Shown here: positions 9,451 to 17,139 of the stretch, one piece after another
How positions within the stretch are numbered: position 1 is the first letter of the stretch
How the letters are laid out: the number at the start of each line of letters is the position of its first letter
Source of the DNA: Paramoeba atlantica
Lineage: Eukaryota > Protista > Discosea
Reading direction: 5' to 3'
Length of the DNA: 64,000 bases
Assembly (NCBI GenBank): GCA_977017575.1
Contig: CDRNVI010000201.1
Span: 1 to 64,000 of the forward strand
Notes under the pieces: generated by a model
Seen by the model: the letters and a program-made list of their open reading frames with translations, nothing else
Databases searched by the model: none
What the model was told of the DNA's origin: nothing
Made by a program: the position numbers and the translations under genes

Positions 9451-12400
9451 TTGTTATTAAGGTTTTTTATTTTTTTTTTATTTATTTTTATTTATTTATT
9501 ATTATTTTTTATTTTTTATTTTTTATTTTTTATTTTTTTATTTTTTTATTTTTTTATTTTTTTATTTTTTTATTTTTTTATTTTTTTATTTTTTTATTTT
9601 TTTATTTTTTTATTTTTTTATTTTTTTATTTTTTATTTTGTGGGATTTTTTTTTGACAATTTTGGGGTCTTATTGTTTGTTAGTTTGTTTGGAAATTTGG
9701 AAATTGATTGTTGATTGATTGTTAATCATTATTCATTGATTGCCAATTGTTGATTGTTGTTGTTTTGATGAATGATTTATTTTGTTGTTTGGTCCTCATA
9801 AAAAAATTATTTGGAATAAAAAGACAAAAAAAAATAAATAATAAATAATAAAAATGTTGCACAACAGAAAAGTGGGCGAAAATTAAATCCTCAATTGGAA
9901 ATAACAAACAAACATCGAATTCTTTATCATCTTGAATCTATTTCTCTTCAATTTCATCATGATGGTTATTTTCTCTCTTTTTTTCTTTCTCTTTCTCTTT
10001 CTCTTTCTCTTTTCTTGAATCTATTTCTCTTCAATTTCATCATGATGGTTATTTTCTCTTTTTTTTTTTCTTTTTCTTTTTCTTTTTTTTTTTCTTTTTC
10101 TTTTTCTTTCTCTTTCTCTCTTTCTCTTTTCTTGAATCTATTTCTCTTCAATTTCACTATGATGGTTATTTTCTCTCTTTTTTTCTTTTTTTTTCTTCCT
10201 TTTTCTTTTTCTTTTTCTTTCTCTTTTTTTCTTTTTTTCTTTTTCTCTCTTTCTCTTTCTCTCTTTCTTTCTTTCTCTTTCTCTCTTACCTTTTTCCAAA
10301 AGAACTGAGAGACTGAAATGAAAATAAAATAGGATCACAAACAAAAGGGGAAAGAGGGGTTGAGAATAAGAGAATAGGGAAGAGAAAGAGTCAACATTTT
10401 TTAAATCGATTGTATGTGTTTTTCTACTGGATGATTATTTATTAGCTTTTTTTTTTCTTTTTTTTTCTTTTTTCTTTTTCTTTTTTTCTTTTTCTTTTTT
10501 CTTTTTTCTTTTTCTTTTTTTGTTTTTCTTTTTCTTTTTCTTTTTCTTTTTTTTTCTTTTCTTTTTTTTTGTTATTTTTTCGACCGCTTTCATTTTATTT
10601 CAAGTTAAAAAAACGAAATTTAAATGATCTCTCTTTCTTTTTCTTCTTCCCTATTCTCTCCCTCTCTCTCCCTCTTCTCTCCCTCTCTCTCCCTCTTTCC
10701 TTCTCTTTTCCAATAAAACAGAGAAAAGAGAAAATCAGGGGGACATCAGGGGGCGATTATTGCAAGAGATTCGAGTCCGAGTATCACTCGACGCAAAGAT
10801 GCTGCTGCTCAGAAAAAACCTGTTTTTTATTTTTTTATTATTTTTTTTATTATTTTTTTTATTATTTTTTTATTATTTTTTTTTTTGTTTTTATTTTGTT
10901 TTTTTTATTTTTTTTTTGTTTTTTGTTTTTTCTTTTCTTTTTTGTTTTTTTTTTTTGTTTTTTTCTATTTCTTTTTTCTTTTCTTTTTTTTTCTTTCTAT
11001 CTTCCACCTCTCTCTTTCTTCCTCCTTTTCTCTCCTCTCTCTCCCCTCTCTCTCTAATCTCGACAAAACAAAAACAAAACAGAAAAAAGAGAAGAGCGCA
11101 GGATCAATTGGATTACCATATAATATTGTTCATCGTGCTCATGTTGATGTTGATTTTAATTGGACGGTTTTTTTTTTTTTCTATTTTTTTTTTTCTATTT
11201 TTTTTTTTTTTTTTTTTTTATTTTTTTCCTTTTCTTTTTTTCTTTTTTTTATTTTTCTTTTTTCCTTTTTTATTTCTCTTTTTCTCTTCTGTTCTCTTTC
11301 CCTCTCTTTCTTTTATCTTCTTGAATGAAATAAAAATTTATTTATTTATTTTTAATTATTGTTTAATAAAGGGAGGAAAAGCTGGAGAAATGTTTACAAT
11401 GCAAGAGAAATTGGGAAAGGGTGCTTATGCTACTGTTTATAAAGGTAAAACCTTCTTCTTTCTCTCTCTTTCTCTCTTCTCTCTCTTCCTCTCTCTCTTC
11501 CTCTCTTTCCTCTTTCTTTCTTTCTTTGTCTTCTTCCTTTCTTCCATTTTTTCCTTTTTCTTCTTCTTTTTCTTGTTCTTGTTCTTTCTCTCTTTTGTTC
11601 TCTTCTCCCCTCATTTCCCTTTCTCCTTTCTTCTCCTTTCTTTCTCTCTCTCTCTTTCTCTTTCTCTAATTAATCTTTTCAAAGGGATACACAAAGAAAG
11701 TGGATTTATTTTGGCGATAAAAGAAATTGAAGATATTGATGATGATGAAGATTTGAAAAAAGAAATTGATATTTTGAAAGGTTTTATTTTTATTTCTTTT
11801 CTTTTCTTTTCTTTTCTTTTCTTTTCTTTTCTTTTCTTTTCTTTTCTTTTCTTTTCTTTTAAATAAATTTCCCTCACTTCTTCTCTTTCCTTTCTCTTTC
11901 CTCTCTTTCCTCTCTTTCCTCTCTTTCCTCCCTCTCTCTTCTCCCCCCCATTAGCATGTCGACATCCAAATATTGTATGTTATTATGGAACTTGCGATAC
12001 ACAGAAGAGTTTATGGATTTTAATGGATTATTGCGGAATGGTAATTTTTTGATTTTAGAGACAGAGAGGAAAGAAAAAGAGAGAGAGGAGAGGAAAGAGA
12101 AAGAAGAGAGAGGGAAAAAAAAAGAAAGATGAGAGAGAAATGAAATAAGTTAGCTAAATAAAAGGGATTTGTGAGAGATATGATTGAATTAAGACAAAAA
12201 GTATTACCAAGAGAAAAAAGGAGAAGAGAGAGAAGAGAGAGAGAAGAGAGAGAGAGAGAGAGAAGAGAAAGAGAGAGAAACTAACTCAAATAAAAGGGAT
12301 CTGTGAGAGATATGATTGAATCAAGACAAAAAGTATTACAAGATGCAGAAATTCGATATATTTTGAAGCAATCTTTGAAGGGTCTTTCTTATCTTCATGT

Positions 12401-12755
12401 CAAGGGTATTATTCATAGGTTTTTTTTTATTTGTTTTTTCGAAAAGGAAAAGAAATTGAGAAAAGGAAAAGAAATTGAGAAAAGGAAAAGAAAAGCTTAG
12501 AAAAGAAAAAAAGAAAAAGAAAGAAATAAAAAGAAAGAAAAGAAGAAAGAAGAAGAGGAAAAAAAGAAAAGAAAACTAATAAACAAAAAAAAAAGGGATA
12601 TCAAAGCGGCAAACATTTTAATGAACAAAGAAGGTGATATTAAATTGGCTGATTTTGGTGTTTCTGAACAATTATGTGGAGCTGGTTTTTTATTTTATTT
12701 GTTTATTTATTATTATTTATTGTTATTTATTATTATTTATTATTATTTATTATTA

Positions 12756-12806
<51 letters not shown>

Positions 12807-15800
12807 GTTATTTATTATTATTGTTATCATGATGGTGATATTAAATTGGCTGATTTTGTATTTATTTTATTTATTTATTGAATTATTATTTATTTATAAT
12901 TAATAATAATAATTAATAATAATAATAATGAATGAATGATTAATTTGTGTGTTATTTTAGTGCACGCGGATGATATTGCTGGGAGTCCACATTGGATGGC
13001 TCCTGAAGTTGTTCTTGAAAAAGTTTTTCATTTTCTTTTTTTTTTTTTCCTTTTTTTCTTTTTTCTTTTTTTTCTTTTTCTTTTTTTTCCTTTTTTTTTT
13101 CTTTATTTTTTCTCTCTCTTATTTCTTTCTTTCTTTCTCAAGGATTACGATGCACGATGTGATATTTGGTCAATGGGAGTCACAGCCATTGAAATGGCTG
13201 AGGTTTTTTTTTCTCTCTCTAATGAAAGAAATCAAATTCAATTCAAAAATGAAATAAAATTGAATAAAGAACAAAATAGTAAATAAAATAAATTATAAAA
13301 TAAATTATAAAATAAAGTAATGAAATAGGGATTACCACCAAAAGCACATATGAATCCTGTTCTGGCAATGAAATCTGTTCCAAAAGGTTTTTTCTTTTTT
13401 TTTTTCTTTTTTTCTTTTTCTTTTTCTTTTTTGTTTGTTTTTGTTTGTTTTTTTTTCTTGTCTCTTTGTCTGTTGTTTATGTATAAAATTCTCTTTTTCT
13501 TATCGTCAATCTAACAAAAAAATAGATCCACCACCAAAGTTAAAAGAAGAAGAAAAACACGTTCCAGAATTTCCTGCTTTTTTGCTAAAGTAATTTCTTG
13601 ACTTTTCTTCTCTCCTCTTCTCTCCTCTTCTCTTCCTCTCTCTTTATTGATGTGGCTTTGAAAGACTCACCTTTCTAATTCTTTTTCCTTCCTCCCTCTC
13701 CTTTCTTCCTTCTCTCTCCTCTCTCCTCTTTTCTCTTTTCTCTTTTCTCCTCTCTCCTCTCTCCTCTTTCTCTCCTCTCTCCCCTCTCTCCCCTCTCTCT
13801 CCCTCTCTCTCTCCCCTCTCTCTCTCCCCTCTCTCTCCCCTCTCTCTCCCCCCCCCCTCTCTCTCTCTCTCTCTCTCCCCTCTTCTCTTACCAAGATGTC
13901 TGGTAAAAGAACCAACAGATAGACCATCATCAATCGATATGTTAATGGACCCATTTATTAATGACGCTGGTACTCACGAGGTTTTGAGATCTACTGTTAC
14001 TGAGATGTTGAAGATTCGTAAAGCAAAACAACAAGTTTCTCTTCTCTCTTCTCTCTTCTCTCTTCTCTTCTTTTCTCTTCTTTTCTCTTCTTTTCTCTTC
14101 TTTTCTCTTCTTTTCTCTTCTTTTCTCTTCTTTTCTCTTCTTTTCTCTTCTTTTCTCTCTTCTCTCTCTTCTCTCTCTTCTCTCTCTTCTCTCTCTTCTC
14201 TCTTCTCTTCTCTCTTTTCAATCATGAGTTGAATCAATGGACCCATTTATTAATGGGGCTGGGACTCATGAGGTTTTGAGTTTCCTGTGGCTGGAATGTA
14301 AAAGATCTTTCTTTTCTCTCTTTCTTTTCTCTCTTTCTTCTCTTTTCTCTCTTCGTCTTTCTTCTTTCCTCTTTCTCTTCTTGTTTCTGAAATGTTAAAG
14401 ATTTGCAAGACAAAGCGTTTCTTTTTCTTTTTCTTTCTTTTCTTCTCTTTTTTCTTCTCTCCTCTCATACTAACTTCTCTTTTCTCAAAAGGAAAAAGAA
14501 CGACAACAAATAGAAAAAGAGAAACAAGAAAAAGAGAAAAAAGAGAAAGAGAAAGAGAGAGAGAAAGAGAAAGAGAAAGATAAGGGGAGGCAGAGATCTG
14601 GTGCGAGTGTTCTTCCTCCTCCTCTTTCTTCTCGTTGTAATTTTTTATTTTTTATTTTTTATTTTTTATTTTTTATTTTTTATTTTTTATTTTTTATTTT
14701 TTATTTTTTATTTTTTATTTTTTATTTTTTATTTTTTATTTTTTATTTTTTATTTTTTATTTTTTATTTTTTATTTTTTATTTTTTATTTTTTATTTTTG
14801 TTTAATTTTGTTTTATTTTTTTGTTTTGTTTTTTTGTTTTTTTTGTTTCTTTTTTGTTTTTTTTGTTTCTTTTTCTTTTTCTTTTTTCTTTTTCTCTTCT
14901 TTTTTCCTTTTCTCTTTCTTTTTTTGTGTTTTATTTTGAGTTTCCCCTTTATTTCTCTTTTCTCTCTCTCTCTCTTCTCTCTCTGACTCATCTTCTTAGC
15001 TGGGGGGATTGGAATTCTGGATTATATTCAAGGTTCCTTTTCTTTTCTTTTCTCTTTTTTTCTTTTTTCTTTTCTTTTTCTCTTTTACTCTTTTCTTCTT
15101 CTTTCTCTTTTCTTTTCTTTTTCTCTTTTCTTCTTTCTCTTTTTTCTTTTTCATCTTCTCATTTTTTTTTTGAAGGTCCGAATCCACCTGCCACTCCTGG
15201 TTTTCTTTTTGTTTTTCTCTTTTCTTTCTTTTTTTCTTTCTTTTTTCTTTCTTTTTTTCTTTTTTGTTTTTTCTTTCTCTTTTTTCTTTCTTTCTTTCTT
15301 TTTTTCTTTTTTTTTTTTTTTTGTTTCTTTCCTCAAATATTTTGATTAATTTCTTTTTAGAACAAAATTTTGGGACTTTTGTTCAAAATGATGGTTTTTT
15401 TTTTCAATCAAAGAAAAGAGAGAGAAAAGAGAGAGAAAAGAGAAGGGAAAAGAGAAAGGTTTTCAAAGAAGAGAAAGAAAAGATAAAAGAGAGAAGATGA
15501 AAAAAAAAACCATTCTTCATTATTTTTTTAAATTATTTATTTTAAAATGAATTTCTTATTTCTTGTGATTTAGAACCAAATTTAGGAACATTTATTGCCA
15601 CAGGTAAAGAATTCTCTCTTTCTCTTTCTCTTTCTTTCTTCTCTTTTTTGTTTTTTCTATTATGACAATTCTAATTCTTCTTGCTCTCTTTTCTCTCCTT
15701 TCTCTCCTTTCTCTCTCCTTTCCCTTTTTCCCTCCTTTCTCTCTCCTTTCTCTCTCCTTTTTCTCCTCTCAGATGAAGGAAACTTCGGAACATTTGTATC

Positions 15801-17026
15801 AAAAGATGAAGACACATCTAGCGCCCCAGATTCTTCAGCATTTGGAACATTTGTTGCAAAAGATGATGAACCCTCTTCTAATTTTGGTACTTTTGTTGTC
15901 TCTGATTCTCCTGGTAGTTCTGGTAGTTCTGAGGAGGTTTTTTTTTCTTTTTCTTTTTTCTTTTTTCTTTTTCTTTTTTCTTTTTTTTCTTTTCTTTTTT
16001 TTTCTTTAATTTCCTTCTTTTTTTTCTTTTTAATTTCCTTCTTTTTTTTTTGTAATTACTTTGGATTTTGTTGTTCTGTTTTTATTGAACTTCTCTCCTT
16101 CTTTCTTTCTCCCCTAGAATTTTGGCACCTTCATCGCAAGAAGTGAAGAATCCGTTTCCCAAAATCTCGGAACCTTTGTTACAAAAGGAGAGGAAGATTC
16201 CTCCCCAAACCTGGGAACATTCGTCACAAAAAGTAACGACCCACCACCATTTGGGACTTTCGTTTCCAAATCTGATGTTTCGGCTTCAGCTCCAAATCTT
16301 TCCGCTCTCTCAAAAGGAGGAGGAGGAGGGAATGAATTTGATTCGCCCCAATTTGGGACCTTTGTGACGAAAGGGCCCCCTCCATCGCCAAAAGTACCCT
16401 TTTTTTCGGGAGGTGCACCGTCACCATCACCTCGGACACCTCGGACACCGAAAGATTTTCCTCCCCCGCCAAGAAGTTATTCATCTCCCAGGGTTGAGGA
16501 GGGGAAGTTGAGTGATAGTGGTGGTGATTTTAGTGATGGTTCTGAGAATTTGGGGACTTTTATTATTTTTAGTGAGGATCCTGCTTCTTTTGCCACTCTT
16601 CAAAAGACAGTTTTGTGTTTTTTTTATTTATTATTTTTTTTTTTTTTAAAAAAATTCTCCTCAGATATTTCTTTTCTTTTTTAACAATATTTAAATATCT
16701 TCTCTCCCTCTTCTCTCTCTCTCTCTCTAGCCCAAAACAAACAGAAGAGCACCTCTTCCTCCCCCACTCTTACCAGATTTACCACCACCACCACCAACAC
16801 CAACACCACCAGCAGCACCGCCACTCCCACTCCCTCGAAATATAGTACCAGAAGTTTTGCCTGAGAATGCTGATGGTTTTGATCTTTCTGATGCTTTTAA
16901 TTTGATCCGCCAGTTGAGAGCTGAGATTGAATTGGTTTTTTTTTCTTTTTTTTTTTTTCTTTTCTTTTTCTTTTTTTTTTCTTTTTTTTTTCTTTTTTTT
17001 TCTTTTTCTTTTTTTTTTTCTTTTTC

Positions 17027-17058
<32 letters not shown>

Positions 17059-17139
17059 TTTCTTTTTCTTTTTCTTTTTTTAAACCTTCTCTTTTTCAAC
17101 TAGTTGAGACAAACCTCAAGAACCTCGCAACAATGGTAA
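6789..17139 (+). CDS. Probable single multi-exon gene: Kelch propeller + CRIB + STE20-family kinase + (F/L)GTF-repeat and Pro-rich tail
   Basis: Kelch blades (PRYGVVS..VGG, PRYGHTC, YIFGG..W, ARFGHTA); CRIB IGLPYNIVHRAHV; kinase GKGAYATV, LAIK, HR|DIKAAN, DFG, GSPHWMAPE. Exon phases are compatible from about 9870 through the kinase; the junction near 9460-9870 is the least certain link. Confidence 0.7.
11083..11166 (+). CDS. CRIB/PBD exon (Rac/Cdc42-binding motif)
   Basis: KKEKSAGSIGLPYNIVHRAHVDVDFNWT fits the CRIB consensus ISxPxxFxHxxHV; phase-0 joins on both sides lead into the kinase. Confidence 0.75.
11372..14033 (+). CDS. STE20-family (MST/PAK-like) Ser/Thr kinase domain
   Basis: Subdomains I-XI traceable across about ten exons: HPNIVCYYG, LWILMDYCG, CDIWSMGVTAIEMAEGLPP, CLVKEPTDRPS. 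Confidence 0.93.
12700..12830. repeat. (TAT/TTA)n microsatellite in a kinase intron
   Basis: Direct reading. Confidence 0.9.

What the first reader, a model, noticed from the sequence alone, without database searches (positions are those of the whole stretch)
15362..16570. Eleven (F/L)GTF(V/I) motifs arrayed in the kinase tail
Seen across four exons: NFGTFVQ, NLGTFIA, NFGTFVS, AFGTFVA, NFGTFVV, NFGTFIA, NLGTFVT (twice), PFGTFVS, QFGTFVT, NLGTFII. Peptide motifs are conserved while codons and spacers vary, which implies protein-level selection. Established: MST1/2 (Hippo) linkers carry repeated autophosphorylated Thr-Met sites that dock MOB1 and the SLMAP FHA domain. Inference: an amplified multivalent phospho-docking array, making this a PAK/Hippo-like hybrid.
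Basis: partly seen in the sequence, partly recalled or inferred. Interest (0 to 1): 0.7.

Follow-up and report, generated by a model that had tools for sequence, protein, structure and literature searches.

The report
Repeated threonine motif in kinase tail
An amoeba's Hippo-type signalling kinase carries eleven copies of a short threonine motif in its floppy tail, an enlarged version of the sites that the human relatives phosphorylate on themselves to dock the partner protein MOB1, so this docking device probably predates animals.

Summary
Eleven [FL]GTF[VI] motifs lie on the + strand at 15369-16564, in four exons of one reading frame, and a spliced transcript contig carries all of them. Shuffles give 0.26.

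The gene is an MST/Hippo-like STE20 kinase of a paramoebid amoeba. A weak CRIB-like exon sits just before the catalytic domain. Asp replaces the activation-loop Thr.

The tail is predicted to be disordered. Two partial orthologs (Paramoeba aestuarina and a marine metagenome contig) keep 11 and 9 copies. Spacers and codons drift.

The consensus from 36 copies is [NQ]-[FL]-G-T-F-V-[AS]-[KR] in acidic flanks, with Thr never Ser. It matches the human MST1 T367 MOB1-docking site (QLG-pT-MVI).

GT[FM][VI] is also about 60-fold enriched in the tails of 86 related kinases from other eukaryotes. The array is therefore an amplified old motif.

The genome encodes a canonical MOB1 with an intact phosphate-binding triad. 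The only other array in the assembly (5 copies) lies in a gene whose upstream exons look MOB-like.

Best reading (0.55): an array of autophosphorylation and phospho-docking sites. Phosphorylation itself is untested.

Main rival: the motif also fits the WIRS ligand of the WAVE complex exactly (Toxoplasma TgWIP uses FGTFVK).

This is a new variant of a known kind.

The parts
11083..11166 (+). CRIB-like exon (reads I-G-L-P-Y-N-I-V-H-R-A-H-V-D), immediately upstream of the kinase glycine-loop exon and phase-compatible with it
   Evidence: Pfam PBD PF00786, E 0.016, profile positions 2-18, below the cut-off. Splice phases were read from the sequence. No transcript evidence.
11372..14034 (+). Catalytic-domain exons of an MST-like STE20 kinase. 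Predicted exons: 11372-11445, 11685-11780, 11955-12040, 12297-12418, 12596-12684, 12961-13022, 13143-13202, 13329-13386, 13526-13589 and 13896-14034. The HRDIKAAN, DFG and APE motifs are intact.
   Evidence: Exon-wise Pfam Pkinase hits at collinear profile positions. The ortholog P0002 hits STK3/STK4 best in the PDB. Boundaries were read from GT-AG sites and phases and are not confirmed by transcript.
12963..13022 (+). Activation-segment exon (HADDIAGSPHWMAPEVVLEK). Asp occupies the position of the activating phospho-Thr of MST and PAK kinases.
   Evidence: The Asp aligns with the Glu that stands at this activation-loop position in the PAK1 crystal chains (EMVGTPYWMAPEVV; from memory these are T423E constructs). 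In ortholog P0002 a Glu aligns with the Thr of MST2 KRNTVIGTP (T180 from memory).
14492..14636 (+). Lys/Glu-rich exon that opens the tail and ends ...RQRSGASVLPPPLSSR
   Evidence: Matches transcript contig L026 720-873 at 89%; the low-complexity length differs.
15000..15032 (+). Mini-exon (S-GGIGILDYIQ)
   Evidence: Present in spliced contig L026.
15176..15199 (+). Mini-exon (GPNPPATP)
   Evidence: Present in spliced contig L026.
15361..15393 (+). Tail exon with motif copy 1 (NFGTFVQ, 15369-15383)
15574..15603 (+). Tail exon with motif copy 2 (NLGTFIA, 15582-15596)
15773..15936 (+). Tail exon with motif copies 3-5 (cores at 15784, 15841 and 15883)
   Evidence: No Pfam family.
16118..16609 (+). 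Tail exon with motif copies 6-11 (cores at 16121, 16166, 16211, 16250, 16352 and 16550). The last copy is followed by the conserved block EDPASFATL.
   Evidence: No Pfam family. The splice to the next exon is confirmed by protein P0001.
16731..16934 (+). Proline-rich stretch followed by the start of a C-terminal amphipathic helix (GFDLSDAFNLIRQLRAEIEL)
   Evidence: Spliced in L026 and P0001. AlphaFold predicts a helix at tail residues 322-348 with pLDDT about 90. The block is conserved in P0003. No SARAH hit.
17104..17139 (+). Last coding exon (LRQTSRTSQQW, stop TAA at 17137-17139). The 3' UTR continues to at least 17253.
   Evidence: L026 and P0001.

Best explanation
The tail is an intrinsically disordered linker carrying an amplified array of the old GCK/MST-kinase tail motif G-T-[F/M]-[V/I]. 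In this lineage the motif is sharpened to [NQ]-[FL]-G-T-F-V-[AS]-[KR] within acidic and serine-rich spacers.

By analogy with human MST1/2, the kinase would phosphorylate these threonines, in cis or in trans within a dimer held by the C-terminal helix. Each pT-F-V would then be a docking site for a MOB-type phosphopeptide reader. Eleven sites would give high avidity or allow several readers to bind at once.

Shown:
- The motif array exists, is expressed and is spliced as described.
- It is under protein-level conservation in three species.
- The region is predicted to be disordered.
- The kinase is MST-like.
- The motif fits the published MST substrate consensus and MOB1-binding consensus.
- A canonical MOB1 reader is encoded in the genome.

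Inferred:
- That the threonines are phosphorylated.
- Which kinase does it.
For: 1. Kinase class. Ortholog P0002 is closest to STK3/STK4 in the PDB, and the alignment runs on into the helix after the catalytic domain.

2. Position. The array lies between the catalytic domain and a C-terminal helix, as the MST1/2 linker does.

3. Consensus from 36 copies in four proteins: G 36/36; T 36/36, never S; +1 F35/M1; +2 V32/I4; -2 F22/L14; -3 N14/Q11.

4. Published consensus. MOB1 prefers pT strongly over pS and wants hydrophobic residues at +1 to +3. MST1/2 prefer Thr with a hydrophobic +1. The best MST1 site is QLG(p)TMVI (PMC5461540). MST2 autophosphorylates seven TM motifs (PMC5663475).

5. Age of the motif. 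Strict GT[FM][VI] occurs 13 times in 10 of 86 tails of related kinases from other eukaryotes, against 0.22 in shuffles (max 3 of 500). One of these kinases has a SARAH domain.

6. Conservation. Aligned motif columns are invariant while spacers differ. Codons differ between copies.

7. Disorder. pLDDT is below 50 over tail residues 1-278 apart from two short stretches (90-92, 109-111).

8. Reader. The canonical MOB1 at C148:13930-14635 keeps ILKRLFRV, which contains K153, R154 and R157.

9. Second array. The only other array in the 45.7-Mb assembly lies in a gene whose upstream exons give two collinear Mob1_phocein hits and keep K-K-x-x-R.
Against: - There are no phosphorylation data.
- MOB1 binding is reported to be permissive N-terminal to pT. 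The absolute conservation of [FL] at -2, G at -1 and N/Q at -3 is therefore not explained by MOB1 alone. In other lineages position -2 varies.
- Position +3 is mostly small (A or S) rather than hydrophobic, and K/R at +4 has no counterpart in the published consensus.
- No SARAH domain is detected.
- The activation-loop Thr is replaced by Asp or Glu, so the regulatory logic differs from MST1/2.
- The same hexamer fits the WIRS motif.
- Tail-level relatives were found in only three proteins among 1.8 billion cluster representatives, so the amplified form is narrow in distribution.
Confidence: 0.55

Rival explanations
1. WIRS-type ligand array. [quoted passage not shown] This would tether a Rac/Cdc42-binding (CRIB) kinase to, or cluster, the actin-nucleation machinery. 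Phosphorylation of the Thr could switch binding off.
For: - Thirty-five of 36 copies fit the WIRS consensus PHI-x-T/S-F-x-x.
- The experimentally validated WIRS of Toxoplasma TgWIP is literally FGTFVK and binds purified WAVE complex; an alanine mutant loses most of the binding (bioRxiv 10.1101/2025.06.22.660983).
- This reading explains the invariant hydrophobic -2 and F at +1, which the MOB1 model does not.
- The context fits actin signalling: a CRIB-like exon and a proline-rich stretch next to the array, as in TgWIP.
- Nap1 of the WAVE complex is encoded in the genome.
Against: - WIRS accepts Ser, yet Ser never occurs in 36 copies.
- G at -1 and V/I at +2 are not WIRS requirements.
- One ortholog copy has Met at the essential Phe position.
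- In related kinases from other eukaryotes the motif is mostly GTMV with a variable -2, which is not WIRS. The WIRS fit therefore looks secondary.
- Most known WIRS ligands are tails of animal membrane receptors.
- CYFIP, its N-terminal CYRI-type domain and Abi were not found in the assembly by Pfam family scans, so the pocket could not be examined.
- The second array sits in a gene with MOB-like exons, which this reading does not predict.
Confidence: 0.15
2. A short linear motif for some other reader. Candidates are an appendage or ear domain of a clathrin adaptor (FGxF-type) or an NTF2-like domain (FGDF-type). The Thr would act only as a contact residue.
For: - Arrays of short aromatic motifs in acidic disordered regions are typical of such ligands.
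- The motif occurs in two otherwise different proteins of the same genome.
- The comparisons with the adaptor-ear and FGDF motifs are from my own knowledge and were not tested.
Against: - Four of the 11 copies here, and 14 of 36 overall, have Leu instead of an aromatic residue at the first position.
- Thr stands where those motifs want Asp, Glu or Pro.
- The motif is tied to the MST-like kinase clade across eukaryotes.
- The protein-atlas feature search on the largest tail exon gave no usable hit and Pfam gave no family.
Confidence: 0.1
3. Pseudosubstrate or substrate-decoy array. The T-F-V copies mimic the activation-loop sequence of sister kinases (N-T-F-V-G-T-P in GCK-III, from my own knowledge). 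They would occupy the kinase's own substrate groove and so autoinhibit or buffer activity, rather than recruit a reader.
For: - The kinase has lost its own activation-loop Thr, which is Asp here and Glu in the ortholog, while the tail multiplies a Thr-Phe-Val site.
- Published work reports that truncating the MST1/2 linker raises activity in cells (PMC5663475).
Against: - The same paper attributes that effect to SLMAP-PP2A recruitment, not to pseudosubstrate action.
- Eleven copies are more than an intramolecular inhibitor needs.
- A second array in a non-kinase gene is not explained.
Confidence: 0.07
4. The repeats are strands of a folded beta-rich repeat domain, not linear motifs.
For: AlphaFold places short strands on several motif copies.
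Against: - Those strands have pLDDT below 50.
- Spacers range from 11 to 66 residues here and differ in length and sequence between orthologs.
- The composition is Ser/Pro/Gly/Asp/Glu-rich with no Cys, His or Met.
- There is no Pfam or PDB relative.
Confidence: 0.02

Closest known systems
Autophosphorylated Thr-Met linker motifs of human MST1/MST2 (Hippo kinases) that dock MOB1 and the SLMAP FHA domain
   Same: - The kinase clade is the same by best PDB hits.
- The position is the same: a disordered acidic linker after the catalytic domain.
- The core G-T-hydrophobic-V/I is the same. The human MST1 T367 site QLG-T-MVI matches positions -3 to +2 of this consensus.
- Thr is exclusive, in line with the Thr preference of both the kinase and MOB1.
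   Different: - There are 9-11 near-identical copies instead of 6-7 loose ones.
- Phe replaces Met at +1.
- Positions -2 [FL] and -3 [NQ] are fixed, and K/R stands at +4.
- There is no detectable SARAH domain.
- The activation-loop Thr is replaced by Asp or Glu.
- A CRIB-like exon and a proline-rich stretch are present.
- Phosphorylation is not shown.
WIRS motif (WAVE regulatory complex interacting receptor sequence, PHI-x-T/S-F-x-x), for example Toxoplasma TgWIP FGTFVK
   Same: The hexamer fits the consensus exactly, and several copies in the orthologs and in the C148 gene differ from the validated TgWIP ligand by a single inserted residue (FGTFVAK, FGTFVVK). The motif lies in a disordered region next to proline-rich sequence.
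   Different: - This is a soluble kinase of an amoeba, not an animal receptor tail or a parasite effector.
- It is an array of 11 copies rather than one or two.
- Ser is never used.
- Positions that WIRS leaves free are invariant here.
- The pocket-forming subunits could not be found for inspection.
p21-activated kinases (PAK), CRIB-bearing STE20 kinases
   Same: A CRIB-like sequence precedes a STE20-group catalytic domain, and a proline-rich stretch is present.
   Different: - The CRIB hit is below Pfam's threshold and lies only about 10 residues before the glycine loop.
- The catalytic domain scores better against MST1/2, MAP4K4 and GCK-III kinases than against PAK4.
- From my own knowledge, PAKs lack a C-terminal tail of this kind.

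Membership tests
MST/Hippo (GCK-II) kinases | Catalytic domain most similar to STK3/STK4 | tested here: met
   Ortholog P0002 gives STK3/STK4 as its top PDB hits (E about 5e-39 and 2e-36), ahead of MAP4K4, STK24/25/26 and PAK4. The window exons hit Pkinase at collinear positions. The window's own catalytic exons were not joined for a search.
MST/Hippo (GCK-II) kinases | Activation-loop Thr that is autophosphorylated (MST1 T183, MST2 T180) | tested here: not met
   The window has Asp (HADDIAGSP) and P0002 has Glu at the aligned position.
MST/Hippo (GCK-II) kinases | Linker with multiple Thr-hydrophobic autophosphorylation motifs | tested here: met
   Met at the sequence level only: 11 copies of G-T-F-[VI] in a disordered linker. 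Phosphorylation itself is not testable here.
MST/Hippo (GCK-II) kinases | C-terminal SARAH coiled-coil domain | tested here: inconclusive
   No PF11629 hit for the tail, the last exons or P0003 at E up to 1. A confident C-terminal helix stands at the equivalent position.
PAK kinases | CRIB/PBD domain that binds Rac or Cdc42 | tested here: inconclusive
   PF00786 E 0.016, 15.9 bits against a cut-off of 21.3, on a 28-residue exon covering the core CRIB positions 2-18. No transcript links this exon to the kinase.
PAK kinases | PAK-type catalytic domain | tested here: not met
   PAK4 and PAK6 score about ten orders of magnitude worse than MST1/2 for P0002.
MOB1 phosphopeptide ligands | pThr (not pSer) followed by hydrophobic residues at +1 to +3 | tested here: met
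   T 36/36, +1 F35/M1 and +2 V32/I4, against the consensus in PMC5461540. Position +3 is mostly A or S, a partial mismatch.
MOB1 phosphopeptide ligands | The Thr is actually phosphorylated and binding depends on it | not testable with these tools
   This needs phosphoproteomics or binding assays.
MOB1 phosphopeptide ligands | A MOB reader with the K153/R154/R157 phosphate-binding triad in the same organism | tested here: met
   An exon of the canonical MOB1 at C148:13930-14635 aligns to human MOB1A residues 92-165 (E about 1e-28) with ILKRLFRV identical.
WIRS ligands of the WAVE regulatory complex | Motif PHI-x-T/S-F-x-x in an unstructured region | tested here: met
   35 of 36 copies fit. The region is predicted to be disordered. 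The consensus is quoted from PMC8209697 and PMC10318009.
WIRS ligands of the WAVE regulatory complex | A conserved Sra1/CYFIP-Abi pocket (for example Sra1 Y923 and E1084) in the same organism | not testable with these tools
   Pfam scans of the 45.7-Mb assembly found Nap1 but no CYFIP, CYRI-type domain or Abi_HHR. The tool warns that a blank does not show absence.
WIRS ligands of the WAVE regulatory complex | Ligand is the cytoplasmic tail of a membrane receptor | tested here: not met
   The carrier is a soluble kinase; no membrane segment appears in the tail. TgWIP shows that this feature is not absolute.

The most novel reading that the evidence does not exclude
The motif is a two-state switch that couples a Rac/Cdc42-sensing Hippo-like kinase to actin assembly. 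Unphosphorylated, each [FL]GTFV copy would be a WIRS-type ligand that gathers SCAR/WAVE complexes. Once the kinase phosphorylates the Thr, the same copy would release WAVE and become a MOB-type docking site. The lineage-specific fixing of a hydrophobic residue at -2 and Phe at +1, on top of the old GT[FM]V core, would be the trace of this second reader. It would be the first WIRS-type ligand system outside animals and their parasites.
Probability: 0.1. Interest if true: 0.8.

Novelty: new variant of a known kind. Interest (0 to 1): 0.5.

Why it matters
MST-to-MOB1 phospho-docking is the first step of the animal Hippo cascade and has been worked out in human cells. Here an amoebozoan MST-like kinase keeps the same core site, down to the Q/N-L/F-G-T-hydrophobic-V of human MST1 T367. 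The core motif is also enriched in tails of related kinases from an oomycete, a green alga and other protists. This points to a docking device that is far older than animals.

The paramoebid version is extreme: 9-11 near-identical copies. It is paired with a second array in a gene with MOB-like exons. That makes it a clean natural system for testing how multivalency, phosphorylation and reader binding work together.

Paramoebid amoebae include the agent of amoebic gill disease of farmed salmon (my own knowledge), so their motility and signalling kinases have some applied interest.

The exact overlap with the WIRS motif is a concrete and cheap hypothesis to test.

Tried and rejected
1. Pfam on every tail exon and on the spliced tail gave no family. 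The hits reported for window:15773-15936 are void because I gave the wrong frame; the correct frame, 15775-15936, has none.

2. The protein-atlas feature search on the largest tail exon gave no usable hit.

3. A PDB sequence search with the tail gave only a chance-level hit (E 1.1) to the NUP50 N-terminus, which happens to contain MGTFSV.

4. The search for related loci in metagenome contigs with the C148 array exon found nothing. The word search with that exon found only an ORF fragment of the same locus.

5. I guessed by eye that the middle of the C148 gene is RhoGAP-like. Neither exon-wise Pfam nor a genome-wide RhoGAP scan supports this, so I do not claim it.

6. CYFIP, CYRI-type domain and Abi family scans of the assembly were blank, so the WIRS pocket could not be inspected.

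7. The Chen et al. 2014 WIRS paper (PMC4059610) is not held. My recollection that the pocket is conserved mainly in animals is unverified.

8. A folded repeat domain is rejected on low pLDDT and variable spacers.

9. A recent DNA-level tandem duplication is rejected.

For the tail I used the natural spliced contig L026 by reference. The catalytic exons were searched one by one, and the full-length joined protein was never searched or folded.
Full report
OBSERVATION

A six-frame scan of the window finds 11 matches to [FL]GTF[VI]. All lie on the + strand between 15369 and 16564, and none lies elsewhere in the 64 kb. Block shuffles give a mean of 0.26 and a maximum of 2.

The copies lie in four exons: 15361-15393, 15574-15603, 15773-15936 and 16118-16609. 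The splice phases, read from the sequence, put all copies in one frame.

A 2,003-nt contig from a JGI sample, L026, was found through protein P0001. From exon 14492-14636 onward it is a spliced copy of this gene. It continues through two mini-exons (15000-15032 and 15176-15199), the four motif exons and 16731-16934, to the stop at 17137 and into the 3' UTR. Its first 600 nt or so belong to another gene, joined through a GA-rich low-complexity stretch. It therefore says nothing about the 5' part of this gene.

Codons differ between copies. All four Gly codons and three Thr codons are used, and 60% of same-residue codon pairs differ. The flanks are 38% identical at the DNA level. Tandem Repeats Finder sees no unit-spanning repeat.

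THE GENE

Upstream exons give collinear Pkinase hits and keep HRDIKAAN, DFG and APE. The catalytic exons were searched one by one, and the natural contig L026 was used by reference for the tail.

An HMMER search of 1.8 billion cluster representatives with the largest tail exon found only three proteins:
- P0001, from this same gene.
- P0002, a partial protein of Paramoeba aestuarina (EukProt).
- P0003, on Tara-type marine metagenome contigs.

P0002 and P0003 carry the same catalytic C-lobe followed by 11 and 9 motif copies. Earlier notes of this scan place Perkinsela-related contigs in the same assembly. Together with the P. aestuarina ortholog, this points to a paramoebid amoeba as the host genome.

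P0002's best PDB matches are STK3 and STK4 (MST2 and MST1), at E about 5e-39 and 2e-36. MAP4K4, GCK-III kinases and PAK4 (6e-29) come behind.

A 28-residue exon just before the glycine-loop exon has a sub-threshold PBD/CRIB hit (E 0.016).

The activation-loop Thr of MST and PAK kinases is Asp here and Glu in P0002.

No SARAH domain is detected. AlphaFold does place one confident helix at the very C-terminus, at tail residues 322-348.

THE MOTIF

Thirty-six copies were tabulated: 11 from the window, 11 from P0002, 9 from P0003 and 5 from the C148 gene described below.

| Position | Residues |
|---|---|
| -3 | N14, Q11 |
| -2 | F22, L14 |
| -1 | G36 |
| 0 | T36, never S |
| +1 | F35, M1 |
| +2 | V32, I4 |
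| +3 | mostly A or S |
| +4 | K17, R5 |
| flanks | D, E, S, P |

In a three-species alignment the G-T-F-V columns are invariant while spacer length and sequence drift. The last copy is followed in all three species by [ED]DPA[ST]FAT[LMV], then a proline-rich stretch. In the two sequences that reach the C-terminus (the window gene and P0003) the C-terminal helix follows as well; P0002 ends before it.

The tail has pLDDT below 50 over residues 1-278 apart from two short stretches. Its composition is Ser/Pro/Gly/Asp/Glu-rich. This is an array of short linear motifs in a disordered linker.

WHAT IT MOST LIKELY DOES

Published work gives the following.
- Human MST2 autophosphorylates seven Thr-Met motifs in its linker. 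pT378-M docks MOB1, and several of the sites bind the SLMAP FHA domain (PMC5663475).
- MOB1 prefers pThr strongly over pSer and wants hydrophobic residues at +1 to +3. It is permissive N-terminal to pT.
- MST1/2 themselves prefer Thr with a hydrophobic +1.
- The two best MST1 sites are GAN(p)TMIE and QLG(p)TMVI.
- A nearby unphosphorylated PSFLEYF element adds a second contact (PMC5461540).

The consensus here, [NQ][FL]GT[FM][VI], equals the MST1 T367 site from -3 to +2. The conserved PA[ST]FAT block after the last copy loosely recalls PSFLEYF. That comparison is only a resemblance.

The core motif is not a local invention. Among 86 related STE20 kinases from other eukaryotes with a tail of at least 30 residues, strict GT[FM][VI] occurs 13 times in 10 tails, against 0.22 in shuffles. 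The carriers include an oomycete kinase, a Closterium kinase and a SARAH-bearing kinase. The paramoebid array is therefore an amplified and sharpened version of an old tail motif of this kinase clade.

The genome encodes a canonical MOB1 whose ILKRLFRV segment, holding K153, R154 and R157, is identical to the human one.

I therefore read the array as multivalent autophosphorylation and phospho-docking sites. That it is phosphorylated and bound is inferred.

A SECOND ARRAY

A paired-motif DNA pattern finds coding arrays at only two places in the 45.7-Mb assembly: this gene and C148:344004-344311; its other matches are non-coding repeat units. The single-motif pattern is otherwise at control level, with 90 matches against 85.

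The C148 exon carries five copies of [ANQP]FGTFV[VI]. No kinase exon lies within about 10 kb upstream or within the 2.7 kb downstream to the end of the contig.

Contigs of a probable RNA run splice this exon to three exons upstream and three downstream. Further upstream, a chain of phase-compatible exons with 57-91-nt GT-AG introns leads back to exons that give two weak but collinear Mob1_phocein hits (E 0.0057 at profile positions 42-69, and E 0.025 at 107-135). One of these exons aligns to the canonical MOB1 at IFKKLLRILAHI (E 3e-4) and keeps K-K-x-x-R.

That the MOB-like exons and the array belong to one transcript is likely from the phases and spacing but is not shown by RNA. A MOB-like protein carrying the kinase's own docking motif fits a Hippo-type module better than any other reading. 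It is also the least secure part of this report.

THE MAIN RIVAL

A literature search for the pentamer led to Toxoplasma TgWIP. Its FGTFVK is a validated WIRS motif (PHI-x-T/S-F-x-x) that binds purified WAVE complex (consensus also).

Thirty-five of the 36 copies fit WIRS. WIRS also explains the invariant hydrophobic -2 and Phe +1, which MOB1 binding does not. In other lineages position -2 varies and +1 is usually Met. The CRIB-like exon and the proline-rich stretch suit an actin-signalling role, and Nap1 is present in the genome.

Several points count against WIRS as the primary function:
- Ser is never used.
- G at -1 and V/I at +2 are fixed although WIRS leaves them free.
- One copy has Met at the Phe position.
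- The motif's wider history is GTMV.

CYFIP and Abi were not found by family scans. The pocket residues, Sra1 Y923 and E1084 (PMC6264382), could therefore not be checked. A dual-use switch remains possible.

VERDICT

The 'PAK' half is weak.

The array is a new variant of a known kind: an amplified, Phe-type, lineage-restricted form of the MST linker motifs, in a kinase that has replaced its activation-loop Thr with an acidic residue.

Noticed in passing
G000:C148:341600-345000 (L023:2639-6007): A second gene carries five copies of [ANQP]FGTFV[VI] (L023:5005-5313). Spliced contigs of a probable RNA run cover L023:4240-6007. Upstream exons give two weak, collinear Mob1_phocein hits and keep a K-K-x-x-R phosphate-binding triad. 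Whether they belong to one transcript with the array is not shown by RNA.
   Followed up: partly
window 12963-13022: The activating Thr of the kinase activation loop is replaced by Asp (Glu in the Paramoeba aestuarina ortholog). This is a built-in phosphomimetic, so the kinase probably does not depend on activation-loop phosphorylation.
   Followed up: partly
window 12171-12230, 12821-12860, 14237-14290, 14380-14410: Introns of the kinase gene hold near-copies of the start or middle of the neighbouring exon: echoes of the exons at 12303, 12631, 13945 and 14000. This is the same thing another first-stage note calls 'exon echoes'.
   Followed up: no
window 9931-10180: A unit of about 60 nt (cttgaatctatttctcttcaatttca...gatggttattttctc) occurs three times, separated by CT-rich low complexity, upstream of the kinase exons.
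   Followed up: no
window 10400-17100 (introns): The introns of this gene are long runs of pyrimidine-rich (CT and T) microsatellite on the coding strand. By contrast, the C148 gene of the same assembly has short introns of 57-118 nt with ordinary composition.
   Followed up: no
L026:1-600: The public transcript contig that confirms the tail splicing is a chimera. Its first 600 nt or so encode parts of another gene, joined through the GA-rich Lys/Glu-coding stretch.
   Followed up: partly
G000 (whole assembly): Pfam family scans find Nap1/Nckap1 (C140:30155-33779) but not its obligate partner CYFIP, nor the Abi homology region. This is either an assembly gap or a failure of the tool's first-look filter.
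   Followed up: partly
window 16731-16840: A proline-rich stretch (PLPPPLLPDLPPPPPTPTPPAAPPLPLP) follows the array and is conserved in P0003. It is a likely SH3, profilin or EVH1 ligand and has no counterpart in MST1/2.
   Followed up: no
L024/L025 (metagenome contigs with P0003): The marine ortholog encodes its whole tail and the end of the catalytic domain in one 495-codon open frame without introns. The same region in the window is split into 13 predicted exons.
   Followed up: no
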